From positions 151,419 through 215,418 of the IMG/VR virus record IMGVR_UViG_3300048927_000250: 64,000 nucleotides of DNA; one strand, written 5' to 3'. A program made the translations under genes and the position numbers. The first letter of the stretch is position 1, and each line of letters begins with the position of its first letter. The notes below the pieces were generated by a model. That model searched no databases, was not told the origin of the DNA, and worked only from the letters and a program-made list of their open reading frames with translations. Below, in pieces: positions 1-48,271 of this stretch.

Positions 1-441
1 GGGTACGCGTATTTTCAGAACCTGTCACCGGTGTTGAATTTGGCGGACAGTAACTACGAGTTGACAATAGAGTTAGCGTTGGTGGGTAGTGGATTCATGT
101 GCACGTTCGCTACGGGTGACTACCCGGCTGCCAACAACATCAAGAAAGGACTGGAGTTACTGCACAACCAACTCAGTCAGCCTATTCAGGTCTTCCAGAC
201 CACGGACGCGGGAGCGTTTCAACGCACTTACGGTTATGGTAGTGCCAATAACCAAATGTTGAAGCTCACGGTAAAAGAGGACAGTACGAACATTACCGTC
301 TCCAACAATCAAAACAGTAACCAGGCTGTTGCTGCCAGATTCCGGACTGGGGGTGATTCGTACCTGATGTTGGGGACGTCTCACGGACTGGCTAACCGTT
401 TCACGGGATACTTGAAGTCTCTACGGGTTGTCAAACTGTAA
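1..441 (+). CDS. C-terminal part of a beta-rich protein, possibly virion or tail-fibre associated; 5' end lies outside the window
   Basis: Frame is open from base 1 (GYAYFQNLSPVLNL...) to TAA at 439-441; strand-rich N/S/T/G composition; followed by a terminator. Product class is a guess. Confidence 0.45.
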   Translation, partial: GYAYFQNLSPVLNLADSNYELTIELALVGSGFMCTFATGDYPAANNIKKGLELLHNQLSQPIQVFQTTDAGAFQRTYGYGSANNQMLKLTVKEDSTNITVSNNQNSNQAVAARFRTGGDSYLMLGTSHGLANRFTGYLKSLRVVKL

Positions 442-444
442 CGA

Positions 445-486
445 AACAAAAAAAAAGAAAGAGGGGCGAAAGCCCCTCTTTTATTC
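445..486. terminator. Bidirectional intrinsic terminator
   Basis: GAGGGGC-GAAA-GCCCCTC hairpin (461-478) with an A-tract upstream and a T-tract downstream, between convergent genes. Confidence 0.85.
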
Positions 487-945
487 TCCATCCACCTCGT
501 AAGGGTGGTGGACATCAATCTCTAAGTCAGTGGGGCCTAGAATGCGCTGTATCATCGGATAAACCTCCCAATGTTTCAGCCACCCATTTCCACACCCGGG
601 CATCGTCATCGCGATATCGAAGAGCCCACGCTGGTCATACGTGTCTCTGAGCTTAATCAGTCCCTGTTCAACCCACTCCATCTTAGACGGGGCTTTCCAG
701 TCTACTTTAGTGGGGAACAACAGGATGATTTTTCCGTCGGGCATCCGCTCGCTGTACAACATGCCAATCTTGAACATCCCGGCGCGGCACCACTTACGGT
801 ACTTTTCGTAGAGGGCAGGATAGTTATCACGGCAATCCTTCGCAATCCCCGCACCCATCGCCCCAACGCAGTTCACCGTTATCATGATGCACTCTTTATC
901 AGTGTCCCAGATGTTCTGGTTCTTGAGCTTCCTGATGATTGCCAC
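481..945 (-). CDS. Macrodomain protein (DarG/Appr-1-p-like ADP-ribosylhydrolase)
   Basis: Motifs TVNCVGAMGAGIAK, LFPTK..W and IAMTMPGCGNG match the DarG-type macrodomain. Confidence 0.85.
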   Translation of the reverse strand: MAIIRKLKNQNIWDTDKECIMITVNCVGAMGAGIAKDCRDNYPALYEKYRKWCRAGMFKIGMLYSERMPDGKIILLFPTKVDWKAPSKMEWVEQGLIKLRDTYDQRGLFDIAMTMPGCGNGWLKHWEVYPMIQRILGPTDLEIDVHHPYEVDGE

Positions 946-1270
946 TTTCTGATTTCTCCTTTATTTTTTCTACTAATCGCGTAATGGCATCGCCGCATTG
1001 GAAGATGACGTTGGTAAGATGACTGTGGTGCCCCAGTTTGTGGTGAATGGCTGTAACAAAATAGGGAAATTGTTCTTCGGTCGGGAACCAGCCGACGAAC
1101 TGGTTCCACCCGATTCGAGCGACGTTGTCCTGGAGTAAATGTACTGCCACCATTGACTCAACGAGGTACCCCACTGTAATGAAATTGGAACCGGGTGAGA
1201 CCTCATTCACTGAGACGAGATGTAACCCTTTCTCCTGACATTGGTAGTTATCAAAAACTTTAGGTTCCAT
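899..1270 (-). CDS. Hypothetical protein
   Basis: 123 aa ORF with GGAG SD upstream, co-oriented with neighbours. Confidence 0.65.
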   Translation of the reverse strand: MEPKVFDNYQCQEKGLHLVSVNEVSPGSNFITVGYLVESMVAVHLLQDNVARIGWNQFVGWFPTEEQFPYFVTAIHHKLGHHSHLTNVIFQCGDAITRLVEKIKEKSESGNHQEAQEPEHLGH

Positions 1271-1290
1271 GAGCTGTCTCCTACGAAAGA

Positions 1291-1322
1291 AAAAATAAGT
1301 AGGGGCAAAACGCCCCTACTTT
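1291..1322 (-). terminator. Intrinsic terminator
   Basis: AGTAGGGGC...GCCCCTACT hairpin with an A-tract on its left (U-tract on the minus strand). Confidence 0.75.
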
Positions 1323-1431
1323 CGGTTAAATTTCCCACCACGTATCGTTGGCTTTCGTGATGGTATCGGACCCCGACAAATGTGCTTTGTAATCTCTACG
1401 CATACAGAGTGGAGTCCAAGTAAAAAATAAC

Positions 1432-1950
1432 TCAAGGGCGGCGGGTGATGTTGAGCATGATGAAATAAATCAGGAGTGCCATGATTTTACGGTTCACCTC
1501 AGCAGCCACACGCAGCTCTTTGTTCGCCTCCCGAATCCGGTCGTTGACATCTTTAAAGCATTTGTCGACGTAGAAGAAATCGGGCTGGTAGAGATACTGG
1601 AACTTCTCACACAGGACCAGGTCACCTTGGCGGGTTGCCAACACGACTTTGCGTTCTTCCAGGTTACAGCGGATAGCGAGCCAGGGGGCGTGGGTAGTCA
1701 GGTAACTGACCGCTGCAAAATCAAAGGTGCAACGTGTATCCGTATCCCCGGTATCGCGATAGACCAGTTTCAGTATCTGGTGAGCAATCTGACCACGACG
1801 GTTGGTGTCGTAAGTGTTAGCCAGGTCGTTCACCAGACAAGTTAATTGATAGCCCCGCTTACGGAAACGGAGATGACAGAACAGTGCGTACAGTGGGTAG
1901 AGCAGAATCCCAAAGAACCGCCAGATGAAGTAGTTAGTGTTCGCAGACAA
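1432..1950 (-). CDS. Hypothetical protein with possible N-terminal membrane anchor
   Basis: 172 aa; hydrophobic YFIWRFFGILLYPLYALF followed by basic RFRKRG. Confidence 0.65.
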   Translation of the reverse strand: MSANTNYFIWRFFGILLYPLYALFCHLRFRKRGYQLTCLVNDLANTYDTNRRGQIAHQILKLVYRDTGDTDTRCTFDFAAVSYLTTHAPWLAIRCNLEERKVVLATRQGDLVLCEKFQYLYQPDFFYVDKCFKDVNDRIREANKELRVAAEVNRKIMALLIYFIMLNITRRP

Positions 1951-2014
1951 AAGAAAAACTCCTTATCCCGTGGAGGGAATAGAAGCCACCAGAGGTTTCC
2001 CCCTGGTGGCCACG

Positions 2015-3535
2015 CTAGATTAAACGTCCCAGCCGCGCCTGACGCGTTCGCTTGATGCGACTTTTAAACAACGTCTGCCGTCGTTTACCGTACGTGACCT
2101 GTTTGGGAATATCCTCACAGATGTACGCATGGTACTCGACTTGAACGTTGGGTCGCTTCGGCAGCTCACGTAGACGACCGAGGCACTGTACGTTTTGGTT
2201 CGGGGAGTCTGACGACACGGTGTTGTGCACCTGCGTCAGGTCTGGGATATCAACCGCTGTACCGGCCTTGATGACCGTTGAGAAGATGATGTCCGATTCT
2301 TCCAGGACCGTATAGTCGTCACCGGCATTAAACGAGTTAATGATTAAGTCCGGTAGCTTTCTACGGAAGTACTCCAGAAGGTGTTGGCCCATTTCGACCA
2401 GCCCGGTGAAGATAAGCAACTTGGTCCCTTCTTCCTTCTCCAGTACCCACTTGTCCAGTGCGTAGTTGTAGACGGCGTCCAGATACCGTTGCATCATCTC
2501 CGGGTGACGCATGATAACCTTCTCGTACTCGTTGTGCGAGTACACCGACTGTTTGTTGAAGTTCTCAAACAGTCGAGGGTCTTTCACGTTGTAGAACACT
2601 TCCACCATGTCTGCGTAAACGCGCAGTTCCGCGGCTTCCTTACGGATGCGGTGCGGGAGCATGGTTTCGTACACGCGCTTGATGAACTCGTCACGTGGGA
2701 ACAATGTACCAGTCAGGTACACGGTCATTGGCATGTGAGTGTACAAGTCAGCGATGTAGTTCGCGTGATACTCCTGGTGGGTTTCATCGGTACCGCGTAA
2801 CCCAATCCCCAGAAACTCGTAGAGCTCCCAAGGTGGGACATCTTCCGCTCCGGTTCCGGCATCTGCGCCAGACTCGTAGTTGTTGATGTAGGTACGAATC
2901 GCCCCGTTAGAGATAAAGATGGCTTTGACGCCGTCTAACCCCTTCTTCTTTTTCTCCCGAATCAATTGGTACAACCGTGCCGCACCACAGCAGCTGCGAA
3001 TCTCGTCGGGCGTAAGTGAGAGGTGTTTATGAAACGCCTCCAACCATCGCCCTTCGTAACCGCCTTTGGTCTGCACGGCAAAGCGCTGACCGAAACGAGC
3101 GGCGATAAAGAGAAACATCAGTGTCTTACCGCCGCCTGGCTGAGTGGTGATACAGGTTTGTCGGTCCCCACGAAACGCGAAGTCAATAACGGGCACCTGG
3201 TTATCCCAGGGCACCCATTCCCCCATGTCCAGTTCCACGCGGGCTCCGGCTACCGGTTCATGGTAGCGAAAGTCCAACGAGGTGTCCTGAATCCCGTGCT
3301 TCTTGAGATGGTCGTGAAACAACTCCCATTCGTTACGGTGGAGGTGGTACCGCCCGTGCTTTGGCGACTTAGCCGCGTACACACAGTGCGGTTCCATGTA
3401 GAACTTACCGCGTTTCTTCGTCAGCTTCTTTTCAATCAACCCCGTGAGCCATTCGCGCAATGCCACACGCATCCTGGGACCCACGGGATTAACCGTATAG
3501 AAGTGGCTGTAGAACTCCAGTACGCCCTCAACCAT
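2015..3535 (-). CDS. Superfamily 2 helicase (UvsW-like, phiKZ gp75 position)
   Basis: Walker A QPGGGKT, Walker B DETH, motif VI QCLGRLR; directly downstream of the nvRNAP subunits. Confidence 0.9.
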   Translation of the reverse strand: MVEGVLEFYSHFYTVNPVGPRMRVALREWLTGLIEKKLTKKRGKFYMEPHCVYAAKSPKHGRYHLHRNEWELFHDHLKKHGIQDTSLDFRYHEPVAGARVELDMGEWVPWDNQVPVIDFAFRGDRQTCITTQPGGGKTLMFLFIAARFGQRFAVQTKGGYEGRWLEAFHKHLSLTPDEIRSCCGAARLYQLIREKKKKGLDGVKAIFISNGAIRTYINNYESGADAGTGAEDVPPWELYEFLGIGLRGTDETHQEYHANYIADLYTHMPMTVYLTGTLFPRDEFIKRVYETMLPHRIRKEAAELRVYADMVEVFYNVKDPRLFENFNKQSVYSHNEYEKVIMRHPEMMQRYLDAVYNYALDKWVLEKEEGTKLLIFTGLVEMGQHLLEYFRRKLPDLIINSFNAGDDYTVLEESDIIFSTVIKAGTAVDIPDLTQVHNTVSSDSPNQNVQCLGRLRELPKRPNVQVEYHAYICEDIPKQVTYGKRRQTLFKSRIKRTRQARLGRLI

Positions 3536-3544
3536 TTAGTCTCC

Positions 3545-5533
3545 CTAGACCACTTTCACCCCTTTCGTCTGCCAGTACTGATTCCACTTCTTGATGTTCA
3601 AGAACAGTGGGTCAAATGAATGGTTAGGACGAATGCGGTGAATGTAAGATTTCGGGTCAGCTATCATCTCGAACTGTCGTTCGTACGCCGCTTTCGCAGA
3701 CAAACTACGACCGCTCATGATGCGGGTTTGTGGTGCAAAGTGAATCCCGGTCCCGAGCTTCGGCAGACGGAAGTCGCCGTTTTTCGGGTCACGACCCATC
3801 ATGCAGTACAACACCAGTTCCACAATACCCAAGTTGACCGAGAACTTACGGTTGGTCATGTCACACACCAGTCGAATTGCACCGGCCAAGTTCACGGGGT
3901 CGGTCAGGTCACGGCGGAGTAACTCTTTACCGATGTCCGACGACATGAAGATGACCGATTTCAACTCTTCCATTTGCTCCAGGGTTGAACCACGGCGTTC
4001 CGGGAAGCGCAGGATGATTTCTGCGTTGTCCCAGTTCATCAGGTCAACCTCAATATATTTGCCGACGGTTTGGAAACCAAAGTCGCGCATATATTGGAGG
4101 AACTCTTTGGTCAGGAATGGGCGGTAGGAGCCACGGCTGACAGGGACGATGTCCATTTTCTGGTTCTTATCCCCGTTATCAATAACGAGAACAATTTCCT
4201 TAATCGTGGAGATACGGGACAAGTCACCGTCTTTCAGTTCGTTAAAGATGGAGATATCTGCCAGACGGAAGATGTCACTCACATCGAAACGGACTTTAAC
4301 GTGCTTGCCCCAAAGGTCCCTGGAAAGCGTTATCTCCTTATCGTCACCGAGGTTGGAGATGTACTTCAGTTCGTGGTCATGAATCACGTACGATTCTGAC
4401 TCCGCAGAGACCAGGTGGTGTTTGGTGGAAATAACGTCCTGTGATACGGCTTCGTTCTGGGTAACCGTCAGGGCGAAACCAGGGTTGGTGTCGTCCTGTA
4501 CCCGCGACGCATTCTCACAAAGACAATACTTACACACCACACCGTCTTCTGGATGCTGGCACTTCGACGGTGTACGCATTCGAATCACGGTACCCACTAA
4601 GTGGTTATCGTAACCTTTCCCGCGCACCATCTTCAAATCGCCATCCCGGTCAAAGTAATACTTGCCCGGTAAGACGTGTTCCAGGTCATCCTTCGTGACT
4701 TTCCACGGGATGGTTTCTTTCGACCCACAGTCTTGCTGGTCAACGCCGTGTACGACGTAGGTTATCAGCTGAAGTTCGCGGTTATAGTACTCAGTACGTT
4801 TAACCGGTTCACTCGTGGCTAACTGGGCTTGTGCAGCAGAGCAACGGTCCATTGCGGAGAAGGACAGTCGTTTCAGGTGTTCCGAGAACCCAACCGGAAT
4901 CGGGTTAACGAAGATACGCTGGTTAATCTCGCTACGGAAGCCCACCTTGTCGACCACCTGTAACAGCTGACCGGTTTTGGTCATCGAGTTACGGTGTGGA
5001 ATGGCCAGGTTATTGTGGTTCAGGCTCGGGTCATGGGAGAGGATATACACGAACTCTTTATAGCCGTTCGAGATATCGCGTTTCCCGGTTATCGGCCGTT
5101 CACGAATCTCCTTCAATTGTGGATGGCGGTGAATCTCCAGGAAGTCGAGGGCGTCGAGTGTGGTTTGGAACTCTTCGCCATCGGTTGCAATCGCATTGTG
5201 CAGCGCTTGCGTTATCCCGGCGTTGATTTTGTAAACGTTCTGGCGGTCTTCCAGCGGATACTCCGCATAGACCTGTTCAGCAGCACGTTGGTGCAGCTTG
5301 TTCTCCAGACCTTTACTCAACGGTTCACCGTAGACGTGGTTCTTAATGCAGAGCGGTATCGACGGGTACTGACGATGATACTCCCAGAAATACCAACTGA
5401 TTAAGGTTTGTGGGAAGTCAGCAATGATTTCCCCGTCGGCAAAGATTAGGGCGATAGGCTCGAGGTCATCGAGCCGTGCCCATATTTGTCGCTCACTCCA
5501 ATGCAGAATATCATCGGCGTAGAAAGTGCGCAT
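3545..5533 (-). CDS. nvRNAP beta' C-terminal subunit (phiKZ gp74-like)
   Basis: beta' Zn-site pattern CGS...RTPSKC...VCKYC, Q..ISTKH trigger-loop-like motif, synteny. Confidence 0.9.
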   Translation of the reverse strand: MRTFYADDILHWSERQIWARLDDLEPIALIFADGEIIADFPQTLISWYFWEYHRQYPSIPLCIKNHVYGEPLSKGLENKLHQRAAEQVYAEYPLEDRQNVYKINAGITQALHNAIATDGEEFQTTLDALDFLEIHRHPQLKEIRERPITGKRDISNGYKEFVYILSHDPSLNHNNLAIPHRNSMTKTGQLLQVVDKVGFRSEINQRIFVNPIPVGFSEHLKRLSFSAMDRCSAAQAQLATSEPVKRTEYYNRELQLITYVVHGVDQQDCGSKETIPWKVTKDDLEHVLPGKYYFDRDGDLKMVRGKGYDNHLVGTVIRMRTPSKCQHPEDGVVCKYCLCENASRVQDDTNPGFALTVTQNEAVSQDVISTKHHLVSAESESYVIHDHELKYISNLGDDKEITLSRDLWGKHVKVRFDVSDIFRLADISIFNELKDGDLSRISTIKEIVLVIDNGDKNQKMDIVPVSRGSYRPFLTKEFLQYMRDFGFQTVGKYIEVDLMNWDNAEIILRFPERRGSTLEQMEELKSVIFMSSDIGKELLRRDLTDPVNLAGAIRLVCDMTNRKFSVNLGIVELVLYCMMGRDPKNGDFRLPKLGTGIHFAPQTRIMSGRSLSAKAAYERQFEMIADPKSYIHRIRPNHSFDPLFLNIKKWNQYWQTKGVKVV

Positions 5534-5535
5534 TC

Positions 5536-7074
5536 TTACTCCTCTTCATCGGAATAGTCGTCGTCGCTGTCGTCTTCGGAGTCGTCGTCTTCACTGGACT
5601 CTTCTTCCGTTTCAACCACGCTATCCTCAGGAACGATGTCGTCTTCTTCCTCTTCAGCTTCTTCTTCCGGGTCAATGGGTACTGCCACCGGTTGAGCCAC
5701 ATCAGGCGGAATCCCTAAACGGTCCACGTCGAAGTACGCAAACTGAGCGCCTGCGCAATACATCGTGTTGTTCAGGTAACTCAATGCCAGGGAATTCCCG
5801 ACCGGAATCTCTTCACGGTCCACAACACGCTCAATGTCAGTTGGGCGGTCTGTGTTCATGATGTTACTGAAGATTTGATACAAGGCTTTCGGGTTGTTCG
5901 GACGGTCTACCTGGTCGGCCATATACTCGCCACCCAGAATACCTGCCTGGTTACGTACCTCGGCCTCACCCATCAGACGGATTGCCTGATAACGCCACGG
6001 GAGTGCATGGCGGTCTTTCTGCGACATCTTCGCCGGAACCCCATGAACCTGGCGACGCGGTGCATCGACGGCGGACCAGTCGTGACCCGTTTTCTCCAGG
6101 ACAATCATGTAGTTAGCACCGATACGAATCTTGCTGCGTGTACGACGGAGGTCACCCTTCTCGTTGTAGAACGTTACCGGACCGTAATCTGACGGGAACC
6201 GGTCTTCGATGTCACCTACGCCTTCCACCCCGATGTTCTGAGTGTGGGACGGTAAGTAAATGTACATCATGTCTTCAACGACCGAGTTCACATGACGCTT
6301 CACGCGGCGAATGTCGTTACCCATCCCGTTGAACTCAATCAACTTATCGTAGAACGGTTTGGACAACACTTCGTAGAACGACATCAGCAGTTTGTACGCT
6401 TCCCGATAGCCATCGTCAGAACTGTCACGTTTAATCATTTCACGGACGCGTTCTTCCATGCGCATACACTGGAAGTTGTAATACTGCTCGAACACTTTCG
6501 GCGGGTTCATACGGTTGATGGAGACAACTGGAGCAGACAACACTTCAGCTACCACGCCGTATTGGTCCATCGGCATTTGTTCGCGCTTCAGCACTTTACA
6601 AATAACCCCTTTGTCACCCCAGCACCCGGTTGCTTTGAACCCGATGGTTGGTACGACGTCGTAGGTGTATTTGATGACGATACGGCAGGTGTTCAGCTGC
6701 TGGCCGTTGTAGTTAGGGACCAGCTTCAGGCGACCCAGTCCTGGCATCTCACTGGTGGCACCCGCAGAGTCACGAATCAGACGCGAGAACTTCTTAGAGA
6801 ACTTCGGCGTCTTGTTGACCTTACGGTTGTCACGGATGATTTTATCGTAGGCGTCCAGGATACGCTTGTGATACTGACGACGGGCGTTATCGAAACGCGT
6901 TACGTCATCGGTTGGCGTCATCCCTTGTTCTTCCGGCGTCGGCTGCTGTTCCAGCGGGTCGTTTTCCGGTTTCCAGACTTCCACGTCAATCACACGAGCA
7001 TTGCGGGTGTGCGCCTCAATGTAGACGAATTCATCGAAGAAGTAATCGAGTTGCATAATATATTTAGGTGACAA
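5536..7074 (-). CDS. nvRNAP beta subunit (phiKZ gp71-73-like), portion downstream of the in-frame TAG
   Basis: GFKATGCWGDKGVICKV, YMIVLEK and RLMGEAEVR match RpoB conserved regions; begins TTG directly after TAG in the same frame as 7075-7833; very acidic C-tail. Confidence 0.85.
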   Translation of the reverse strand: MSPKYIMQLDYFFDEFVYIEAHTRNARVIDVEVWKPENDPLEQQPTPEEQGMTPTDDVTRFDNARRQYHKRILDAYDKIIRDNRKVNKTPKFSKKFSRLIRDSAGATSEMPGLGRLKLVPNYNGQQLNTCRIVIKYTYDVVPTIGFKATGCWGDKGVICKVLKREQMPMDQYGVVAEVLSAPVVSINRMNPPKVFEQYYNFQCMRMEERVREMIKRDSSDDGYREAYKLLMSFYEVLSKPFYDKLIEFNGMGNDIRRVKRHVNSVVEDMMYIYLPSHTQNIGVEGVGDIEDRFPSDYGPVTFYNEKGDLRRTRSKIRIGANYMIVLEKTGHDWSAVDAPRRQVHGVPAKMSQKDRHALPWRYQAIRLMGEAEVRNQAGILGGEYMADQVDRPNNPKALYQIFSNIMNTDRPTDIERVVDREEIPVGNSLALSYLNNTMYCAGAQFAYFDVDRLGIPPDVAQPVAVPIDPEEEAEEEEDDIVPEDSVVETEEESSEDDDSEDDSDDDYSDEEE

Positions 7075-7833
7075 CTACAACCCACCCAGGATATCGTCGT
7101 GCTTACGCATTGCCAACAACAAACCGTCTTGTCGAATCCTGTCACCCGGTTCCGGGATAAGTTTCTGACGGTCTATCGTACCGTTCACGTTCAACAGGTA
7201 GTGGTCTTTCGGTACGTTAATTGCCACGGTACCAAAGCCACGAGATTTTGCTCGTTCGCACCATTCGTCCATGACCACAAATCCGTCTTCAGTAGTATAC
7301 GGATGGGACATGGTGGCAGTTGTCGTCAGGAGACCTGGACGCCAGATGCCGTATTCATCAATTGACGGAGATTGCGCCAGCGTTGCCCCTGCCTGGAATG
7401 CGCCACCACGGTGGGCTTGTTCCAATGCTTTGAGGTTCAGCTTCTGCTCATATCCGAAATTGTTATGATGCGAGACGTATTTGTCCACGTGCACGATATC
7501 GTATTCTTCTTTCTTACGGTTAAACACGACGTACGTGGTGCGTGGGTTTGTTGTGAAAGCGCCAAGACCTTGCCCAACATTGAACTTTTCGATTTTTTCA
7601 ATGATGTCCATTGGGTCTTTGATTTTGGTCTTCCAGGTATACTTACCATACTCGCGGCCAACTCCGGTATAAAACCGGTCGCGGGTACAGCCTTCAATCA
7701 CCAACGCTTGGGGTAACTGACTACCCCACATTATCAAACGCGAGGCTGACACACCGCCCATCCATGGCAGCAAGTTACACGCCAGTCCCGTTAGTTCGGT
7801 ATAGAGTTGATTCTCATTGGCTAGAGTACTCAT
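7075..7833 (-). CDS. nvRNAP beta subunit, portion upstream of the in-frame TAG
   Basis: SASRLIMWGSQLPQA, TTEDGFVV and IPEPGDRIRQDGLL match RpoB-like motifs; ends ...HDDILGGL-TAG. Confidence 0.85.
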   Translation of the reverse strand: MSTLANENQLYTELTGLACNLLPWMGGVSASRLIMWGSQLPQALVIEGCTRDRFYTGVGREYGKYTWKTKIKDPMDIIEKIEKFNVGQGLGAFTTNPRTTYVVFNRKKEEYDIVHVDKYVSHHNNFGYEQKLNLKALEQAHRGGAFQAGATLAQSPSIDEYGIWRPGLLTTTATMSHPYTTEDGFVVMDEWCERAKSRGFGTVAINVPKDHYLLNVNGTIDRQKLIPEPGDRIRQDGLLLAMRKHDDILGGL

Positions 7834-7868
7834 TGATAATTCCTTAGTATTGGAACACTGTCACTACG

Positions 7869-7876
7869 GTAATATA
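7869..7876 (-). promoter_or_regulatory. Early-type promoter motif TATATTAC upstream of the nvRNAP beta operon
   Basis: Exact match to the phiKZ early consensus, intergenic, about 36 nt upstream of the ATG. Confidence 0.7.
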
Positions 7877-40823: not shown

Positions 40824-41323
40824 CAGAAGTCTCCGTAGCTTAAACCGGAGTCAACGCGCTCTTCACGGAACAGCGTCATGACCTTCACGGCGTTGTTGTA
40901 GACCGTCGTGTTAGAAGACAACACGTGCTTACAATAAGCGTCGTAAAACTCGACTTCCGTAAATTTGGCATCCTTCGCCATTTTCAGTGCGCGGTCAATC
41001 AACTTCACTTCCCAGCGCGGGTCTTGCAGGAATTCAACCCAGGCATGACGCAGGACATGGTACGTTTTGGTCACTAGTGGGGTGTCCCAGAAAACCTTAT
41101 CATTCAGGTCAGCCTTCAGTTCTTCTGCAACCTGGATAGTGCGGCACGGGTGCATGTCCAGGAACGGGAGGTCTAGTCGCGCGAGTCGTACGTATCCCGC
41201 CAACTGTTTCTCACGAAACTCCGATATATCGGAAATATGAATCGTACCGCTAACAGGCATACGAAACTTGTAGCGAGGCAGCAAAGCAACGTCTTGTGAT
41301 TGTGTATCAGTAGTTCCGCCCAT
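40823..41323 (-). CDS. Hypothetical protein
   Basis: 166 aa with GGAG SD. Confidence 0.65.
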   Translation of the reverse strand: MGGTTDTQSQDVALLPRYKFRMPVSGTIHISDISEFREKQLAGYVRLARLDLPFLDMHPCRTIQVAEELKADLNDKVFWDTPLVTKTYHVLRHAWVEFLQDPRWEVKLIDRALKMAKDAKFTEVEFYDAYCKHVLSSNTTVYNNAVKVMTLFREERVDSGLSYGDF

Positions 41324-41397
41324 CGGTAGTTCTCCGCCATTTCATCCTTCGACTAAAGAAAGTAAATCTCAAATTACATACGAAGACCCGATGCGTC

Positions 41398-41433
41398 AAA
41401 AAAAAAAGAGAGGGGCGCAAACCCCTCTCTTTT
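41398..41433. terminator. Intrinsic terminator
   Basis: AAAGAGAGGGG...CCCCTCTCTTT with an A-tract. Confidence 0.8.
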
Positions 41434-42010
41434 AGCGTATTACTCGGCGCATGGCGGCGAGAACTTGTTCCAGGATATCGAAGTTGATGTACGCCTCATT
41501 GAACGCTAACTGAATCGCGTCAACGTAACACTCGTATTCCCCGAACGCCAGGATAGATTCATCCATGTCGTCCCACCATCGACCAGAATGTTCTTCGAAG
41601 GCAGCGTGAAGTGCGCTGTTGAACCAGTCGTTCAGTTCTCGTAACTTCTCGCAGTACTCGACAAACATTTCCCGGATAATCGGTGGGGTATCAGGATGAG
41701 TAATCTGAATCACCAGTTCCTGATAGAGTGCCGGACGGTTCTTTCGCATCAGGGTGTAACTAAGTTGAACCTTTGCGCGCTCTTCGCCTAACAACATGAA
41801 CTGTTCCATCACGGCGCTGAGCTCGGGTGCCCAACGCAGGCGCATCATGTTGGCGTGTTCACGAGGCAGGTCCCCCACCATCCCGTATAACTTTCTCGAG
41901 TCGGCGTAGACCGTGAACTTTGTTTCCAGTAACCGGCAGACATCCTCGTACAACCAGTCGAGTGATTCTTTGGGAGTACGGGCTTGTGCCCCTCGGCGTA
42001 CGTCAGTCAT
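41432..42010 (-). CDS. Hypothetical helical protein
   Basis: Start at ATG 42010 (42028 is also possible). Confidence 0.65.
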   Translation of the reverse strand: MTDVRRGAQARTPKESLDWLYEDVCRLLETKFTVYADSRKLYGMVGDLPREHANMMRLRWAPELSAVMEQFMLLGEERAKVQLSYTLMRKNRPALYQELVIQITHPDTPPIIREMFVEYCEKLRELNDWFNSALHAAFEEHSGRWWDDMDESILAFGEYECYVDAIQLAFNEAYINFDILEQVLAAMRRVIR

Positions 42011-42374
42011 GTTGGGTGTCCTTGTCAACTAACTTCAGGCGGCATTGCTTGGCCCGAATTTCACTTTCGATGTTGATACGTAATTCGTCCAGGTAACTTA
42101 GTGTCTCCGTCCGCATATCCAGCGGGAGGTTAGACACGATGTGATGCAGGTGTTCGTCCATTTTATCCGGGGTGGTATAATGCACGAGAAGAATCTGGGC
42201 TAAGGTGACGGCTCCAATCTTGTCACTGTACTTGGTGCTCTGTTGTTCCAGGTCCCGTAACAACTCGAGGTCTTCAATGATGAAGCGGTACTCGTCGTTC
42301 TGTTCGATGAGTTGTAACTTATTTCCGAACACGAGGGCGATGAGCTTTTCCCACCATGTCTTACGTTTTGCCAT
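42003..42374 (-). CDS. Hypothetical protein
   Basis: 123 aa, GGAGG SD, amphipathic N-terminus WWEKLIALVF. Confidence 0.65.
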   Translation of the reverse strand: MAKRKTWWEKLIALVFGNKLQLIEQNDEYRFIIEDLELLRDLEQQSTKYSDKIGAVTLAQILLVHYTTPDKMDEHLHHIVSNLPLDMRTETLSYLDELRINIESEIRAKQCRLKLVDKDTQHD

Positions 42375-42444
42375 GCTTCCTCCAACGGATTCTTTTTGAC
42401 CCTATAACTGAGTCTTTGATTTAAAAAATAAAATAAAGGGGCCG

Positions 42445-42768
42445 TTAGGCCCCTCTCTTCAGACTGGCTAACCATGCATCCTGTTTAGCGCACATCCGGT
42501 GGCCCAGACGGTCGTATTCGTTCTGCATGATATCGTACCAGTTCTGAACCGGCTGGCGGTCCAACAGTTGACGGAAGAACTCTTCATGTTTGATGAGGTC
42601 GTCGCCCTGTTGTGCGTACAACAAGTTCAGTGCCTGGTCCAGGTTGTGCGGACGGCCGAAGCGGTGAACTTGTTCCATGTAGCGTAGCGCCATGGTCCGT
42701 TCTTCCTCTTCCACACACAACCCAATCTTCCACATCCGGGTTTTCTTATCCCACTTCGAATGGAACAT
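42445..42768 (-). CDS. Hypothetical protein
   Basis: 107 aa, AGGAG SD, terminator downstream. Confidence 0.6.
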   Translation of the reverse strand: MFHSKWDKKTRMWKIGLCVEEEERTMALRYMEQVHRFGRPHNLDQALNLLYAQQGDDLIKHEEFFRQLLDRQPVQNWYDIMQNEYDRLGHRMCAKQDAWLASLKRGA

Positions 42769-42784
42769 GGTGATACTCCTTAGT

Positions 42785-43393
42785 TTAATTCATAGGAGTG
42801 GTGAAGTGTTTTATTACCGCCTCCGCTCGGCGTTTGAATTCTTCAGGGGTATCCGCATTAAGAATAGGCTCCACAATCTTACCCACAAACTTCGAGTCCA
42901 GCTGTTTTGCCTTGTACCAGTCGATAAGTGCTCCGGCCAGAATCTTCTTGCGGTAGCTGTGGATATAATCCCGCGAAGCTTCCTGGAAGAACGTCCGTAC
43001 ATCTTCCAGTTCAATGATAGCCGGGACAATCTTATCTTCGTTAGTTCGCACCCGGTTGAGGGAGGCGACGGTTTTGTCAATGAGGCTGTTAAGCTCTTTG
43101 TCAAAGTCCTCCCCTTCCAGGTTGAGGTTACCGAACTCACGCCAAGTTTTCTCCCACCAATCATTCACACCTTCCAACTTACCGATGTTGTACATGACCA
43201 CCATCCCGACATTCACTGCCCCTGCACGGAAGATGCGACCAGTCCCGTTTGGACTGAAGTCTTTCAGGCTGGAGAAGACGGTGTCGTGAAACTCGGGGTC
43301 CTGCCATTCATCAGTGATGAACTTGCGCAAGGTGTTGACCAGCAGTTGGTTGTGGAACTCCTTTTCCACCGGGTCAAGTTTGTAATACTTCAT
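42785..43393 (-). CDS. Hypothetical protein
   Basis: 202 aa ORF in the operon. Confidence 0.65.
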   Translation of the reverse strand: MKYYKLDPVEKEFHNQLLVNTLRKFITDEWQDPEFHDTVFSSLKDFSPNGTGRIFRAGAVNVGMVVMYNIGKLEGVNDWWEKTWREFGNLNLEGEDFDKELNSLIDKTVASLNRVRTNEDKIVPAIIELEDVRTFFQEASRDYIHSYRKKILAGALIDWYKAKQLDSKFVGKIVEPILNADTPEEFKRRAEAVIKHFTTPMN

Positions 43394-43773
43394 CAGTTAG
43401 CATCCATAATGATGGTCCCGGACGTCCCCTTGTAATCAACCGTCATGGTTTCGCTGGGTACCGTGATGAATTGGAACTTAATAACCCCACCTTCGTTGAA
43501 GATGACTTTAACCGGAGCACCGGGGTAACCTGCCTCGCGGAACTGACGGGTTAAATGTGGCCAGTACTCAGGGTTGATGAGAGATTGCGGACGGAAGAAG
43601 CGGGTGACGAGGTGTTCTTTATCCAGTTGCTTAATCAACACCATGAAGAACACCTCACCGGGAAAACATGCCTCATACCCCCCGGTCAGTATATCCAGCG
43701 GTGTCTCCTGGTCCTCGATGGTAACGAACAATCGTTCTGGGAGTTCAGAAACATATTCCTTTTCGCCGGTCAT
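43393..43773 (-). CDS. Hypothetical protein (paralogue of 43770-44183)
   Basis: Start moved to ATG 43773 (ATGA overlap). Confidence 0.65.
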   Translation of the reverse strand: MTGEKEYVSELPERLFVTIEDQETPLDILTGGYEACFPGEVFFMVLIKQLDKEHLVTRFFRPQSLINPEYWPHLTRQFREAGYPGAPVKVIFNEGGVIKFQFITVPSETMTVDYKGTSGTIIMDAN

Positions 43774-44183
43774 TGTGCATTCACCCCACTGCTGACATTC
43801 CCTTTGTAACTGAGGGTGCGCTTCCCTTCGTTCTTCAGGACGTTCTCGTACTGGAACTCCTCCCCCGTATTCCACAATACCCGAATCACCATAGGCGTGT
43901 GTCCGCCGTGTCTAACCTGTGCTGCAACCAGTGCCCAATGTGTCAGGTCCAGTTTACGGTTGGGGTAGAAGACCATCATCGGACTTTTGTCCGGAACAGG
44001 TGTCACACCCTCAGGAAGTTCTTTGGTGTCCATGGCCAGCATCAGGTATTCACCGCCTTCCACTGCCCCCGCCCATCCAGTACGAATCCCCCAGAACGGA
44101 AACACCATCCCAGCTGTACAGACGACTAAGTCCGCTTCCTTTCCCTTATCGTCTACAGGGAAGCTTTCATTGGTTTTAATCAT
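43770..44183 (-). CDS. Hypothetical protein (paralogue of 43393-43773)
   Basis: Start moved to ATG 44183 (ATGA overlap). Confidence 0.65.
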   Translation of the reverse strand: MIKTNESFPVDDKGKEADLVVCTAGMVFPFWGIRTGWAGAVEGGEYLMLAMDTKELPEGVTPVPDKSPMMVFYPNRKLDLTHWALVAAQVRHGGHTPMVIRVLWNTGEEFQYENVLKNEGKRTLSYKGNVSSGVNAQ

Positions 44184-44479
44184 GGCTTCTCCCACCCTTT
44201 GTCATTACGGCGTGTGATTACCCAGGTTAAGACTTTCATTGCCCAAGCGTGAAGTTCATCCAGGGTAGCGTCCCCAGAAGTTTCCGTCACTACCTTGCTC
44301 ACGAGTACCAATGCGTCTTCGTAGTTCTGTGGAGCAAACTCTACGTAACTTCCGCGTAAGACGAAGGTGTTCTCGGGAATGTTGCGATGCGTCAGGTATT
44401 GCGTTTCACCTTTAGCCATATCGCGTACTGAGTGGGGTACAATGATAGGAACAACGATTCCGTAATTAGCGTGTAACAT
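44180..44479 (-). CDS. Hypothetical protein
   Basis: 99 aa, AGGAG SD. Confidence 0.6.
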   Translation of the reverse strand: MLHANYGIVVPIIVPHSVRDMAKGETQYLTHRNIPENTFVLRGSYVEFAPQNYEDALVLVSKVVTETSGDATLDELHAWAMKVLTWVITRRNDKGWEKP

Positions 44480-44529
44480 GACTCTCTCCTGAATAAGGTT
44501 TTTTATTGAATGGTTAATTTAATTAGTTT

Positions 44530-44775
44530 GAAATTTTTCGAGTGATTGGTCTCTCACTCTGAAAGAAGGATAGAGTACTAGCGTACTCACTCAGTACCCT
44601 CTAATGATTACTCGTATTCACTCGCAATCATACGGGTACTAGTTAACAGCACAAAAGCCCCTACGGGCCTTTTGGCTGGAAGTTCAAAACAATGCACCCC
44701 ACCGTAAAAAATAACCGTTATACGACGGAATACCTATCGAAACACCCCTTTTCAGAGATGTTCGATAAATATAAT
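44530..44775. other. AT-rich, hairpin-dense non-coding region (candidate ncRNA, leader or origin)
   Basis: Six inverted repeats in about 230 nt, no long ORF. Confidence 0.4.
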
Positions 44776-44800
44776 AAGTCAGAGTGACCAAATCGTGAAA

Positions 44801-45448
44801 TTACTGTTCGAGGACTGGAGGCTCCGGTGAAGCACTTGGTTCGATGTACTTCAACGTGATGTCAATCATGCGACGGAACTCTGTCCACGTGACTGCCTGA
44901 TGAAGAATCCCGTCCATCAGTTTGTGGATGTAGTAATCGTCGAACTCACCAGCGTCGATGTACTTGGCGATGGATTCTCCCAGTACCCGTTGAGCACTCT
45001 CCACCCGCACCAGGTCAATTAGCGTCTTAATACGGGTAGTGATGTACGACAGGTTAATCAGTAACTGGAATAGCGGTTGGTCATCGACATCACTTTCCTG
45101 CTTGTTGATGGCTTCCCAGATTAACTTTACGCCCCTGTCGACTAACACCTTCACAGCAGGGAGTGTAACCATCTGTCCTCGTTCGAGCTCCTGTTCAACC
45201 AAGTCACGAAGCATGGCGATACGGTCCTGTGCAAACTCCTGCTCGTCCGCCAGTTCTTTGTAGCACGCTGCGGTCTTACTGTAGAAATCTTCCAGGATTG
45301 CACGAATGCGTTCAGGCGGAACAACCATCTCGTTCATCGCCTCCTCATCACCCTGCCACACTACCCCTACGCCAACCAGCATCCAACGTAGGCGGTCGTT
45401 GAAGCGACGTTTCGCATCGTCGCTAAACTCGTAATAACTTCTGTCCAT
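44801..45448 (-). CDS. Hypothetical helical protein
   Basis: 215 aa, AGGAG SD. Confidence 0.7.
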   Translation of the reverse strand: MDRSYYEFSDDAKRRFNDRLRWMLVGVGVVWQGDEEAMNEMVVPPERIRAILEDFYSKTAACYKELADEQEFAQDRIAMLRDLVEQELERGQMVTLPAVKVLVDRGVKLIWEAINKQESDVDDQPLFQLLINLSYITTRIKTLIDLVRVESAQRVLGESIAKYIDAGEFDDYYIHKLMDGILHQAVTWTEFRRMIDITLKYIEPSASPEPPVLEQ

Positions 45449-45477
45449 ATACGCTCCTGTAAAGCGCTGTAGGCGTT

Positions 45478-45510
45478 TAAAAAAGAAAAGGTGGGGGTTT
45501 CCCCACCTTT
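45478..45510 (-). terminator. Intrinsic terminator
   Basis: AAAGGTGGGG-GTTT-CCCCACCTTT with an A-tract on the plus strand. Confidence 0.8.
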
Positions 45511-45517
45511 GATGTTG

Positions 45518-46552
45518 TTACGGGTGAATCTTTTCCCAGAGCTCCTGGTGAGCTTTGATTTCGAGGTGGTTAAGGTACTGTAACGTTCCTTTACGCACCC
45601 CTTGGTAAATATTCACGTAATCGAAGTCGTAATACGCTTCCAGCAGAATGGTGACTGAAGGAGATTTTTCCTGAATCGCCTTGTGTTTACGGTAGACGCC
45701 ACGCACGTGCTGGAAGAAAGCATCACGTACACCGTCCAGGGTTTCCTTCAGGCTGCACGCGAACAGCTGGTACAACGCCACATGTACATCACGCCATGGA
45801 GTCAGGTCACCGTGACCGATGGCTGTCAGACAGAAGCGGCGAGCATCGTCGTATTTGAGCGCCATGGCCACATGACCAACCTTCTCCTGCTCTGTCCAGA
45901 ACCAGTCCGGGGTTTCGGTCTGCGCATGTTCGAAGAACGCCACCACGAGTTCAGGCGCATCGCCGGAATACTGGATGTGGTCAACTGCCAAACTTTTACG
46001 CAGGTCTTTTACTTTATGGACGGCTTCGTTGAAGAGACCTAACCACGGACTGAGCCCATTGGTCTTACCGGGTTCCGATGATGCGAAGACCGGCAGTTCC
46101 AGGTCGGCGAGGAAAGAGCGTAACGCCAGAATTTCCATCAGCAGCGGACGCTCAGGGATACCTTCTACACCGTGGTCACCCAGGTAGTAGTTTGCCTCCA
46201 CCTTCACGCTCATGTGCGAGACTGTGTAAAAGCTGATGTCGCTATCGTCACCCAGCGTCAGCACCCCGTCTTTGTTGATGAGCTGTAGCGTACCGTACCC
46301 ACCGTCTAACTCTAGGTACAACGTGAAGTCTTTGTTGAGGTCCGCTTTCGCCATGTCCTCATCAGACAGTGGGAAGTCGATGCTTTCGTTGACCTTCCAG
46401 TCCAGGGAGATAGTATCGACGGTAATCTTCTGAAGCTGGTCGAGAGAGTGATAACCCTTCTCGGAGATTTCGCGACGCCACTCACAGCGGTCGTCAACGA
46501 AGGTCAGGTAAATTTCTTGTACGTCTTTGTTGGTTGCGAAAAGTGAAGTCAT
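45518..46552 (-). CDS. Hypothetical protein
   Basis: 344 aa; beta-rich N-half, helical C-half. Confidence 0.7.
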   Translation of the reverse strand: MTSLFATNKDVQEIYLTFVDDRCEWRREISEKGYHSLDQLQKITVDTISLDWKVNESIDFPLSDEDMAKADLNKDFTLYLELDGGYGTLQLINKDGVLTLGDDSDISFYTVSHMSVKVEANYYLGDHGVEGIPERPLLMEILALRSFLADLELPVFASSEPGKTNGLSPWLGLFNEAVHKVKDLRKSLAVDHIQYSGDAPELVVAFFEHAQTETPDWFWTEQEKVGHVAMALKYDDARRFCLTAIGHGDLTPWRDVHVALYQLFACSLKETLDGVRDAFFQHVRGVYRKHKAIQEKSPSVTILLEAYYDFDYVNIYQGVRKGTLQYLNHLEIKAHQELWEKIHP

Positions 46553-47133
46553 TTGGTTTCCTCCTGAGGAATGATTTGTTCGACACGAACGATTTTAATG
46601 GTTTCTTTGGCGAAGACTCGCCACTCAGTCGTGTACATGGATGCAGCATTGCCGCCGTACGCCGCCCCGTCAAACCCTGCTGCGATTAATTTAGTAACCT
46701 CTTCAGGGTCGTCGTAGAACGGGTAGGCTTGGAAGTAGAGTTCCTCCAGTCGGTCCGGGTAACGGTCCAACCATTGGTCAATCGTGTGGTTCGGGTACTG
46801 CGCAAATTCCGATACGGTCATGTCCTCCCAGAGGTTGGTGTCGACAATCCACTCTTTGAACTTGCGGGCAATACGTAGGGCTTCGGTACGCCCGAGTTTA
46901 GCTTCAACCTCACCTAACTCCAGGAAGGGGTCAGTCGGGGTATTCTGGAAAAAGTTCTTGCAGTCGAGAGTAGCGACGACAATGCGTGGGTTCTCGACCT
47001 GTCCCAACGCATCCAGTGGATGGATGGCGTAGTAGTGAGCGGTGGGTCGATGGTTACTGAAGGTCCATGACGCCAACCGCTTATCTAAGACGTCTCCCGC
47101 ACCGTAAATGCCGCGAAAGAATTCTGTAGTCAT
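46549..47133 (-). CDS. Putative ADP-ribosyltransferase-fold protein (ART-PolyVal-like)
   Basis: FRG (R7), TFS...TAHYYA (S26), AGFDG, EWRVF (E170) in canonical ART order. Confidence 0.55.
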   Translation of the reverse strand: MTTEFFRGIYGAGDVLDKRLASWTFSNHRPTAHYYAIHPLDALGQVENPRIVVATLDCKNFFQNTPTDPFLELGEVEAKLGRTEALRIARKFKEWIVDTNLWEDMTVSEFAQYPNHTIDQWLDRYPDRLEELYFQAYPFYDDPEEVTKLIAAGFDGAAYGGNAASMYTTEWRVFAKETIKIVRVEQIIPQEETK

Positions 47134-47789: not shown

Positions 47790-47820
47790 TACTTTTTTCT
47801 CCTGAATAAAAGAATACACT

Positions 47821-47842
47821 CCAGGTCCCCGAAGGAACCTGG
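47821..47842 (-). terminator. Hairpin with C(UUCG)G loop
   Basis: Minus strand CCAGGTTCC-TTCG-GGGACCTGG. Confidence 0.6.
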
Positions 47843-47869
47843 AGGCATAAGGTTTATGTCCGTCGTAAA

Positions 47870-48271
47870 TTATGACTTACGATTCTGGTGAGCAGCGATA
47901 CCGTTGACAATGCGTTTCAACGCGTCGACCGTGTCGTTCCACTTGCGGTACAATTCGCTGGCGTGACCGAATTCAGGGAACGCATTGATTTCGATTTCCA
48001 TCGCGCGCATCACACCTTTGAAGTCATGGTGGTCGAACATAGATGGCCAGACAGCCCCGATGTGGGATTTGACGGTCTGGTACTGCATCCCAGCTTTGGA
48101 AGCTTTCATTTCCCCAACGGTTGGGAGACGCACTTTATCCAAATAGTCAGTAAGCTCGGACAAAGGTGCTTCGGTTTGCTTATTCAAAAGCTTGATAAGT
48201 TTTTCTTTATGCTCATCATCGAGTTCTTCGATTAGACCCACGATGATATTGTATATTTTTTCTTGTTTCAT
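47870..48271 (-). CDS. Hypothetical protein (paralogue of 48307-48702)
   Basis: 133 aa; aligns by eye with the upstream gene. Confidence 0.7.
   Translation of the reverse strand: MKQEKIYNIIVGLIEELDDEHKEKLIKLLNKQTEAPLSELTDYLDKVRLPTVGEMKASKAGMQYQTVKSHIGAVWPSMFDHHDFKGVMRAMEIEINAFPEFGHASELYRKWNDTVDALKRIVNGIAAHQNRKS

What the first reader, a model, noticed from the sequence alone, without database searches (positions are those of the whole stretch)
7060..7095. Single in-frame amber codon splits the nvRNAP beta subunit
Seen: minus strand reads GAT ATC CTG GGT GGG TTG TAG TTG TCA CCT AAA TAT, i.e. HDDILGGL*LSPKYIMQLDYFFD. Both halves are in one frame with no gap or overlap, so readthrough would give one 765-aa protein. 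Recalled: the phiKZ gp71-73 product is continuous across this segment (roughly HDDDLAPAEMTP), which would place the TAG at a Glu/Gln position, one base from GAG or CAG. TAG is also a real stop here (2015, 3545, 18134, 35974), so global recoding is unlikely. Inference: (a) suppressor-tRNA or programmed readthrough gating middle/late transcription; (b) a true new two-chain split with TTG reinitiation (GGGTGGG lies just upstream); (c) an amber mutant stock or a sequencing error.
Basis: partly seen in the sequence, partly recalled or inferred. Interest (0 to 1): 0.85.

Follow-up and report, generated by a model that had tools for sequence, protein, structure and literature searches.

The report
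Amber codon is probably an assembly error
The stop codon that splits this jumbo phage's RNA polymerase gene is really in the deposited contig, but an independent assembly of the very same phage strain has a normal Glu codon there, so it is most likely a local sequencing/assembly error and not biology.

Summary
The TAG at window 7077-7075 (minus strand) is there. It splits a 765-codon frame into 252 + 512 codons of the phiKZ gp71-73-type non-virion RNA polymerase beta-like subunit. It is not a lone point change. It is one of 7 substitutions in 28 nt (7053-7080), all at G on the coding strand (6 G>T, 1 G>C), hitting 6 of 6 G's in a GA context and no non-G base.

The window is the last 64 kb of a metagenome contig (JGI 3300048927, Ga0496124_0000077). 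An independent SRA run (Logan SRR35925735) contains the same strain. It is identical at 49,870 of 49,877 compared bases, and the only 7 differences are this patch. There it reads GAG (Glu) and the conserved VELSPKEMME. That contig ends 6 nt past the patch, next to a 287-nt gap in the Logan assembly.

Both named relatives and 12 aligned homologues have Glu at this position. No tRNA gene occurs in about 92% of the contig or in PhiEaH1. TAG ends other genes normally. No new ribosome-binding site, promoter or RNA structure was created.

Best reading: one aberrant read bridged a low-coverage gap. A rare dead variant is second. Programmed readthrough and a functional gene split are unsupported. Interest is low.

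The parts
7075..7077 (-). In-frame TAG; GAG (Glu253) in both named relatives and in the same strain assembled from SRR35925735
7053..7080 (-). Patch of 7 substitutions private to the JGI contig (7080, 7077, 7066, 7062, 7060, 7057, 7053), all at G on the coding strand: 6 G>T and 1 G>C. Protein effect: V>L, E>stop, E>Y, M>I, E>Q, plus one silent change
7069..7084 (-). Genuine strain-level synonymous differences from PhiEaH1 (GGC>GGT at 7084, GGT>GGG at 7081, TCG>TCA at 7069; CCA>CCG at 7066 in the Logan contig, overwritten to CCT in the window)
7078..7833 (-). Upstream ORF, 252 aa: N-terminal third of the nvRNAP beta-like subunit (phiKZ gp71-73 homologue)
5536..7074 (-). Downstream ORF: 512 aa from TTG 7074, or 506 aa from ATG 7056 as called by JGI. 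Contains the GFK...GDKGV motif that corresponds, by inspection of the alignment, to the two double-psi beta-barrel lysines, and an acidic C-terminal tail
6760..7046 (.). Stretch present in the JGI contig but not covered by either Logan SRR35925735 contig. One ends at 6759 and the other at 7047. Read as a local low-coverage gap directly beside the patch
7055..7062 (-). TATATTAT, the 8-mer core of the phage early promoter, made by three of the G>T changes. It lacks the TGA box (has TCG) and the A at -5 found in all 12 gene-strand (presumed genuine) sites, so it is judged incidental
7861..7876 (-). Genuine early-promoter-like site TATATTAC-CGTAG-TGA, 43 nt upstream of the RNAP gene's ATG
3545..5533 (-). 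Next gene downstream, 662 aa, homologue of phiKZ gp74 (7ogp_D, E 2.4e-55). Ends in a normal TAG

Best explanation
The TAG is a local error of the deposited metagenome assembly and not a property of the phage. The phage strain itself carries an intact 765-codon gene with GAG at this codon. In the JGI assembly, a 28-nt stretch next to a thinly covered region was taken from an aberrant read (or a very few reads) in which G's on one strand were miscalled as T (once as C). Inferred steps: correct reads stop at about 7047, so the assembler removed the short correct dead end and kept the only path that crossed the gap. The G-only, next-base-dependent pattern is what a base-calling problem would give. 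Shown: the gene identity, the 7-base difference, its base and strand specificity, the otherwise perfect identity of the two assemblies, and the contig break beside the patch.
For: (1) The same strain in an independent run has no stop. Logan SRR35925735 contigs match the window at 49,870 of 49,877 bases. The only 7 differences are at 7053-7080, where Logan reads GTG GAG TTG TCA CCG AAA GAG ATG ATG GAA. (2) Error-like signature: all 7 changes fall on G of the coding strand (11 G among 28 nt, P = 2.8e-4). G is changed in 6 of 6 GA contexts, 1 of 3 GT and 0 of 2 GG, and 0 of 17 non-G bases are changed. The spectrum differs from the window's normal divergence, measured on the 10-substitution, 32-nt cluster against the relatives: 2 ts: 8 tv vs 583: 188, P = 4e-4; C>A 5 of 10 vs 28 of 771, P = 2e-5. 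(3) The Logan contig with the wild-type sequence ends at 7047, 6 nt after the last changed base. The next Logan contig starts at 6759. (4) The patch destroys a segment, VELSP(K/R)EMME, that is invariant in PhiEaH1 and in seven relatives down to 52% identity. Glu253 is kept in all 12 aligned full-length homologues and in 32 of 40 family-wide. No homologue has the patch residues. (5) It is the only broken gene of about 78 in the window, there are no frameshifts, and there is no other C>A or G>T cluster in about 197 kb of the contig. (6) The 252-aa product exists on this one contig only among 153 billion indexed gene positions. (7) The rest of the gene on this lineage has 15-16 substitutions with only one amino-acid change, so there is no pseudogene decay.
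Against: No reads could be inspected, so the number and quality of reads behind each allele is unknown. It is not shown that SRR35925735 and JGI 3300048927 are the same library. This is inferred from the perfect identity and from both assemblies breaking within 12 nt of each other at window 63,988-64,000. Seven miscalls inside one read, with correct sequence on both sides long enough to be joined by an assembler, is an unusual error. A real but rare damaged molecule would look the same at the assembly level. The assembler behaviour (tip clipping) and the two-colour base-calling mechanism are inference from general knowledge and were not tested.
Confidence: 0.8

Rival explanations
1. Real but rare variant. 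A minority of phage genomes in the sample truly carry the 7-substitution patch, from one clustered strand-specific mutational event. The assembler happened to follow that path. The allele is a null or crippled copy of an essential gene and survives only briefly, or by complementation in co-infected cells.
For: Assemblers do not invent sequence, so the patch existed in at least one read. Strand-coordinated clusters are known outcomes of damage to single-stranded DNA (general knowledge). The rest of the genome is identical to the wild-type assembly, so the event would be very recent. In phiKZ the nvRNAP genes, including orf71-73, tolerate no transposon insertions, so such an allele could not persist alone (PMC12676376).
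Against: Oxidative G damage favours the 5' G of GG runs, but here GG sites are spared and GA sites are all hit (chemistry from general knowledge). The patch sits exactly at a contig break of the independent assembly, which a biological variant would not predict. The truncated product has been seen in no other sample.
Confidence: 0.13
2. Functional gene fission. The subunit is made as two chains (252 aa + 512 aa). Ribosomes terminate at UAG and restart at the adjacent UUG (7074), helped by the GGGUGGG element 6 nt upstream. The chains then assemble, as other split RNAP subunits do.
For: The start codon abuts the stop. The SD-like pairing energy of -6.3 kcal/mol equals the median of real gene starts in the window. 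Jumbo-phage RNAPs are already built from split beta and beta' pieces (PMC8287921).
Against: The SD-like element is ancestral (-7.0 kcal/mol in the intact gene) and was not improved. ATG 7056 has none (+1.3). The split is absent from both named relatives and all aligned homologues, and from the same strain in another assembly. The break lies in an ordered, conserved segment (pLDDT about 81, two short helical turns between strands), and four other conserved residues are changed as well. The promoter-like core made by the patch lacks the TGA box that all 12 gene-strand sites have, and its predicted start site lies downstream of both start codons (PMC5312081).
Confidence: 0.04
3. Programmed readthrough or suppressor-tRNA decoding of the UAG that gates middle and late transcription.
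For: The two halves are in frame with no other defect.
Against: No tRNA gene in the window, in about 92% of the contig, or in the whole PhiEaH1 genome. TAG ends at least six other genes normally. The stop is not conserved. There is no stable RNA structure around it (z = -0.08). The following base is U, generally a strong termination context (general knowledge).
Confidence: 0.02
4. Short recombination patch imported from a divergent homologous gene, or copied from elsewhere in the genome.
For: Three of the 10 differences from PhiEaH1 (GGT, GGG, TCA) are synonymous variants also seen in more distant relatives.
Against: Those three, plus a fourth (CCA>CCG, overwritten to CCT in the window), are simply the strain's own background, shared with the Logan contig. 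The other 7 have no counterpart in any homologue. No donor was found in the window, the PhiEaH1 genome, the phage collection, IMG/VR, JGI metagenomes or 185,579 genomes.
Confidence: 0.01

Closest known systems
phiKZ non-virion RNA polymerase subunit gp71-73 (PDB 7OGP chain C, PHIKZ071)
   Same: Homologous over the whole length. Followed by the gp74 homologue, as in phiKZ. Carries the GFK...GDKGV motif that corresponds, by inspection of the alignment, to the two beta-barrel lysines described for gp71-73.
   Different: phiKZ is interrupted by an intron with a homing endonuclease after codon 394, which is not at this site. The Erwinia-phage protein has an extra acidic C-terminal tail of about 60 aa. 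The window copy has the in-frame TAG.
Erwinia phages PhiEaH1 (gp008, YP_009010061) and vB_Ea277G (WBF04838), genus Iapetusvirus
   Same: 98.6-98.7% nucleotide identity over the gene, same gene order, and the same protein apart from one V/I change outside the patch.
   Different: Both have a continuous 765-aa gene with GAG at codon 253.
Classical phage amber mutants (e.g. T4 am mutants in essential genes)
   Same: A single in-frame UAG, one base from a Glu codon, in an essential gene.
   Different: Those are single-base changes selected on suppressor hosts in the laboratory. This one is part of a 7-base, G-specific cluster in a metagenome contig, with the wild-type allele in the same population.
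Naturally split multisubunit RNAP subunits (jumbo-phage beta-N/beta-C and beta'-N/beta'-C; archaeal B'/B''; cyanobacterial rpoC1/rpoC2)
   Same: A beta-like chain divided into separately translated pieces that could in principle assemble.
   Different: Known splits are conserved across lineages and each piece has its own translation signals. This break is private to one assembly and lies in a conserved, ordered segment.
Consensus errors of short-read metagenome assemblies at low-coverage junctions
   Same: Private to one assembly, base- and strand-specific, next to a contig break in another assembly of the same genome, and it produces a spurious pseudogene.
   Different: Seven errors in 28 nt is more than usual, and read-level proof is missing.

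Membership tests
phiKZ-type nvRNAP beta-like subunit (gp71-73 family) | Sequence homology along the whole chain to the solved phiKZ subunit | tested here: met
   N piece matches 7ogp_C residues 17-249 (E 1.5e-30); C piece matches 254-696 (E 2.5e-45)
phiKZ-type nvRNAP beta-like subunit (gp71-73 family) | Catalytic-core elements (double-psi beta-barrel lysines in the GFK...GDKGV motif; TEDGF segment) | tested here: met
   The motifs are present and nearly invariant in the alignments. Their role is taken from PMC8287921, and the correspondence to the phiKZ lysines is by inspection of the alignment
phiKZ-type nvRNAP beta-like subunit (gp71-73 family) | Gene immediately followed by the gp74 (beta'-like) homologue | tested here: met
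   Window 3545-5533 matches 7ogp_D, E 2.4e-55
phiKZ-type nvRNAP beta-like subunit (gp71-73 family) | One continuous reading frame (after any intron is removed) | tested here: not met
   Broken by TAG in the window, but intact through codon 253 and the patch in the same strain's independent assembly, whose contig ends after codon 262, and continuous in about 290 of 303 phage genomes
Programmed stop-codon readthrough / suppressor-tRNA recoding | Stop codon conserved at the site in related genomes | tested here: not met
   GAG or GAA in PhiEaH1, Ea277G, P0002-P0004 and the same strain. Glu in all 12 aligned homologues
Programmed stop-codon readthrough / suppressor-tRNA recoding | A suppressor tRNA (CUA anticodon) available from the phage | tested here: not met
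   No tRNA genes in the window, in about 92% of the contig, or in all of PhiEaH1. About 18 kb of the contig was not seen
Programmed stop-codon readthrough / suppressor-tRNA recoding | Stimulatory context or RNA structure near the stop | tested here: not met
   Folding energy is no better than shuffles (z = -0.08). The next base is U
True gene fission into two cistrons | Split shared by related genomes or by independent samples of the strain | tested here: not met
True gene fission into two cistrons | Translation start signals for the downstream piece that arose with the split | tested here: not met
   The SD-like element before TTG 7074 scores -6.3 kcal/mol but -7.0 in the intact ancestor. ATG 7056 scores +1.3
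True gene fission into two cistrons | Two protein products that assemble into active enzyme | not testable with these tools
   Needs protein analysis of infected cells
Jumbo-phage early (virion-RNAP) promoter | TATATTAY core plus TGA 5 nt downstream and A at -5, in an intergenic position | tested here: not met
   The patch site has the core only (TATATTAT-GCAAC-TCG, C at -5, intragenic). All 12 gene-strand TATATTAY sites in PhiEaH1 and 6 in the window have the full motif. Motif identity from PMC7058600 and PMC5312081
Laboratory amber-mutant stock | Sequence derives from a cultured, mutagenised or selected phage stock | tested here: not met
   The window is an exact part of metagenome contig JGI 3300048927 Ga0496124_0000077 / IMGVR_UViG_3300048927_000250
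Sequencing/assembly artefact | Absent from an independent assembly of the same genome | tested here: met
   7 of 7 differences between the assemblies lie in the patch, and 49,870 other bases are identical
Sequencing/assembly artefact | Base-, strand- and context-specific pattern unlike evolutionary divergence | tested here: met
Sequencing/assembly artefact | Variant supported by few, low-quality reads | not testable with these tools
   Raw reads are not available here. The only indirect evidence is the contig break at 7047 and the gap 6760-7046 in the Logan assembly

The most novel reading that the evidence does not exclude
The amber-containing allele is real and co-circulates with the wild type in a natural Erwinia jumbo-phage population. 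It would be either a cheater genome complemented in co-infected cells, or a freshly split nvRNAP subunit expressed by termination-reinitiation at the UAG-UUG junction. That would capture the first step of the subunit fission that shaped jumbo-phage RNA polymerases.
Probability: 0.04. Interest if true: 0.55.

Novelty: not a real feature. Interest (0 to 1): 0.07.

Why it matters
If it had been real, an amber codon inside an essential phage RNA polymerase subunit would have pointed to translational gating of the middle/late programme, or to a subunit fission caught in the act. As it stands, the value is practical. The deposited IMG/VR genome carries a spurious pseudogene in a hallmark gene, and anyone using this UViG for gene-content, essentiality or recoding surveys would be misled. 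The case also shows a cheap test. An independent assembly of the same strain, plus the base-specific signature of the differences, can expose such errors without access to the reads.

Tried and rejected
(1) Homing-endonuclease or intron scar: phiKZ's intron (gp72) interrupts the gene after codon 394, not near 253. Rejected.

(2) Donor for the patch: none within the window at up to 3 mismatches, in the PhiEaH1 genome by fuzzy 18- and 22-mers, in the phage collection, or in IMG/VR, JGI metagenomes and GTDB genomes with a 26-mer.

(3) Diversity-generating retroelement: the changes are not at adenines, and I did not search for a reverse transcriptase. Rejected.

(4) New internal promoter: the patch creates TATATTAT, the early-promoter core. 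For a while this looked like a designed stop + promoter + start arrangement. It was rejected because the site lacks the TGA box and the -5 A that all 12 gene-strand sites have, because its predicted start site lies after both start codons, and because three G>T changes in AAAGAGATGATG produce the core automatically.

(5) General poor assembly quality: rejected. No other broken gene or frameshift was found. A second candidate at 40.8-41.3 kb is intact (166 aa, as in Ea277G).

(6) Apparent extra differences between the JGI and Logan contigs suggested by gene lengths (110 vs 151 aa and so on) are gene-caller differences on identical DNA.

(7) Literature searches for the sample identifiers found nothing.

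(8) CRISPR-escape recoding of a 32-nt protospacer was considered and dropped. The true private patch is 28 nt, G-specific and non-synonymous.
Full report
OBSERVATION. The frame 7833-5536 has 765 codons and this single stop. That leaves a 252-aa ORF (7833-7078) and a 512-aa ORF from TTG 7074, or 506 aa from ATG 7056 as in JGI's gene call. Searched separately, the pieces match the phiKZ non-virion RNA polymerase chain 7ogp_C (PHIKZ071, the gp71-73 product). The N piece matches residues 17-249 (E 1.5e-30) and the C piece 254-696 (E 2.5e-45). The next gene (3545-5533) matches phiKZ gp74. So the gene identity and the position of the stop in a continuous homologue are confirmed. By inspection of the alignment, the C piece holds the two double-psi beta-barrel lysines described for gp71-73 (PMC8287921). 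The 252-aa product alone therefore cannot be a working subunit. In phiKZ this gene tolerates no transposon insertions (PMC12676376).

WHAT THE WINDOW IS. The window is about 98.6% identical to Erwinia phages PhiEaH1 and vB_Ea277G (genus Iapetusvirus) and collinear with them. It is an exact part of IMGVR_UViG_3300048927_000250, which is JGI metagenome 3300048927 contig Ga0496124_0000077 (215,418 bp). Specifically it is the last 64 kb of that contig, so window x equals contig x + 151,418. The source is a metagenome assembly and not a laboratory stock.

THE STOP IS PART OF A CLUSTER. Both named relatives have GAG at the codon and annotate one 765-aa protein. Against them the window has 10 substitutions within 32 nt (7053-7084), while the other 2,266 nt of the gene have about 21, nearly all silent. 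In the conserved block 1280-31582 this is the only such cluster. The Poisson P is 1.8e-13 per position and 5e-9 after correction. The cluster has 2 transitions and 8 transversions, including five C>A on the + strand. The other 771 window-specific changes are 76% transitions and 3.6% C>A (P = 4e-4 and 2e-5). The amino-acid changes (V>L, E>stop, E>Y, M>I, E>Q) fall in VELSP(K/R)EMME. That segment is invariant in PhiEaH1 and in seven relatives down to 52% identity. The Glu is kept in all 12 full-length homologues aligned and in 32 of 40 across the wider family. No homologue has the patch residues. An AlphaFold model of a 93%-identical relative places the site in an ordered segment (pLDDT about 81) of two short helical turns between two strands. 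It is not a floppy linker.

THE DECISIVE COMPARISON. Looking up neighbouring proteins by exact sequence turned up a second data set with the same strain, Logan assemblies of SRA run SRR35925735. Contig _2773467 (7,110 bp) is 100.000% identical to window 1-6759. Contig _96400 (56,942 bp) covers window 7047 to about 63,988. Across the 49,877 window bases that I could compare there are exactly 7 differences. All lie at 7053-7080, and they are six C>A and one C>G on the + strand. The remaining 49,870 bases are identical. At the patch the Logan contig reads CTG GGT GGG GTG GAG TTG TCA CCG AAA GAG ATG ATG GAA. That gives Glu at the stop position and the conserved peptide intact. It also shares the window's silent GGT, GGG and TCA codons, so those are genuine strain variants. 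The strain therefore has an intact codon there, and the lesion is private to the JGI contig.

SIGNATURE OF THE SEVEN CHANGES. On the coding strand all seven are at G: six G>T and one G>C. The 28-nt span has 11 G's and 17 other bases, and no other base is changed (P = 2.8e-4). G is changed in 6 of 6 GA contexts, 1 of 3 GT and 0 of 2 GG (P = 0.015). This is not what divergence, recombination or a DGR would give. It is also not the known preference of oxidative damage for the 5' G of GG (general knowledge). It is the sort of pattern expected when the call for G depends on signal from the following base. On two-colour instruments G is the dark base, so this would be a base-calling artefact. That is inference, not shown.

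POSITION RELATIVE TO ASSEMBLY BREAKS. Logan contig _96400 carries the wild-type patch and ends at window 7047, 6 nt past the last changed base. The neighbouring Logan contig begins at 6759. That leaves 6760-7046 unassembled. Both the JGI and Logan assemblies also end within 12 nt of each other at window 63,988-64,000. The simplest reading, which is inference, is that both derive from the same or nearly the same reads. Coverage by two or more correct reads stops at 7047, and only one aberrant read crossed the thin stretch. The JGI assembler then kept that bridging path and discarded the 34-nt correct dead end.

TESTS OF THE BIOLOGICAL READINGS. Suppressor or readthrough: ARAGORN finds no tRNA gene in the window. 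It finds none in seven further tiles of the contig either, so about 92% of 215 kb is scanned in all. It also finds none in the whole PhiEaH1 genome. TAG ends at least six other genes; the stop-codon tally is TAA 41, TGA 30, TAG 7. There is no RNA structure around the stop. Fission with reinitiation: GGGTGGG lies 6 nt before TTG 7074 and pairs with the anti-SD at -6.3 kcal/mol, the median of real starts. However, the intact ancestral sequence scores -7.0, and ATG 7056 scores +1.3. Nothing was gained by the patch. Internal promoter: three G>T changes turn AAAGAGATGATG into AAATATATTATG. This creates TATATTAT, the core of the jumbo-phage early promoter: phiKZ TATATTAC (PMC7058600) and AR9 AAATATATATTAT-N6-G (PMC5312081). 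The six other copies in the window are intergenic and upstream of genes. All 12 gene-strand copies in PhiEaH1 carry TATATTAY-N5-TGA with A at -5. The patch copy has TCG and C instead. It resembles the one intragenic non-promoter copy in PhiEaH1, and its predicted start would lie after both start codons. I regard it as a by-product. Donor sequence: none was found anywhere. Assembly quality in general is good. This is the only broken gene of about 78, there are no frameshifts, and there is no other C>A or G>T cluster in about 197 kb. The truncated 252-aa product is on record from this one contig only.

VERDICT. The feature is most likely not real biology. I put about 0.8 on an assembly or sequencing artefact. 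I put about 0.13 on a genuine but rare and probably dead variant molecule, about 0.04 on a functional split, and 0.02 or less on readthrough. At the assembly level it has in effect been done here, and it came out in favour of GAG. The gene itself is an ordinary member of the gp71-73 family in a new strain of a known genus.

Noticed in passing
window minus strand, first bases at 7876, 13470, 29304, 36617, 48776, 52061: Six intergenic copies of TATATTAY-N5-TGA (A at -5), the early (virion-RNAP) promoter type of phiKZ-like phages. PhiEaH1 has 12 copies, all on one strand. The 8-mer occurs only once outside such sites in 436 kb of two-strand sequence, against about 13 expected at uniform composition, so it seems to be avoided elsewhere.
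   Followed up: partly
window 5539 to about 5730 (minus strand): The nvRNAP beta-like subunit of this clade ends in an acidic tail of about 60 aa (…DPEEEAEEEEDD…SDEEE). The tail is absent from phiKZ gp71-73, predicted disordered (pLDDT < 50), and retained in relatives down to about 52% identity. Its function is unknown.
   Followed up: no
window 63,988-64,000 (contig end): The JGI contig and the independent Logan contig both stop within 12 nt of each other, inside the homologue of the PhiEaH1 tail-fibre gene gp080. About 3.8 kb of the genome is missing there. This suggests a repeat or strain variation in the tail fibre.
   Followed up: no
window 41,000-48,100, e.g. 42,321-42,350 and 44,952-45,341: Runs of dense divergence from both relatives (up to 10-12 window-specific changes per 35 nt, with mixed spectrum) in small hypothetical genes. 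These look like mosaic recombination tracts and are unlike the RNAP patch.
   Followed up: partly
L034 (JGI 3300048914, Ga0496111_0123673), L029 and L033 (Logan SRR35925735): The same Iapetusvirus strain turns up in a sibling JGI metagenome and in an SRA run. It is a third lineage of the genus, about 98.5% identical to PhiEaH1 (Hungary) and vB_Ea277G (Mexico).
   Followed up: partly
L035 vs L037 (window 8,134-29,543): Identical DNA was given different gene starts by the JGI and Logan gene callers (110 vs 151 aa, 75 vs 124 aa, 110 vs 124 aa, 375 vs 381 aa). Length differences between catalogues are therefore not evidence of sequence differences.
   Followed up: yes
whole PhiEaH1 genome (L003, L004, L012-L014) and about 92% of the UViG: This 218-kb nucleus-forming jumbo-phage lineage (a chimallin homologue is present) encodes no tRNA at all.
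   Followed up: yes
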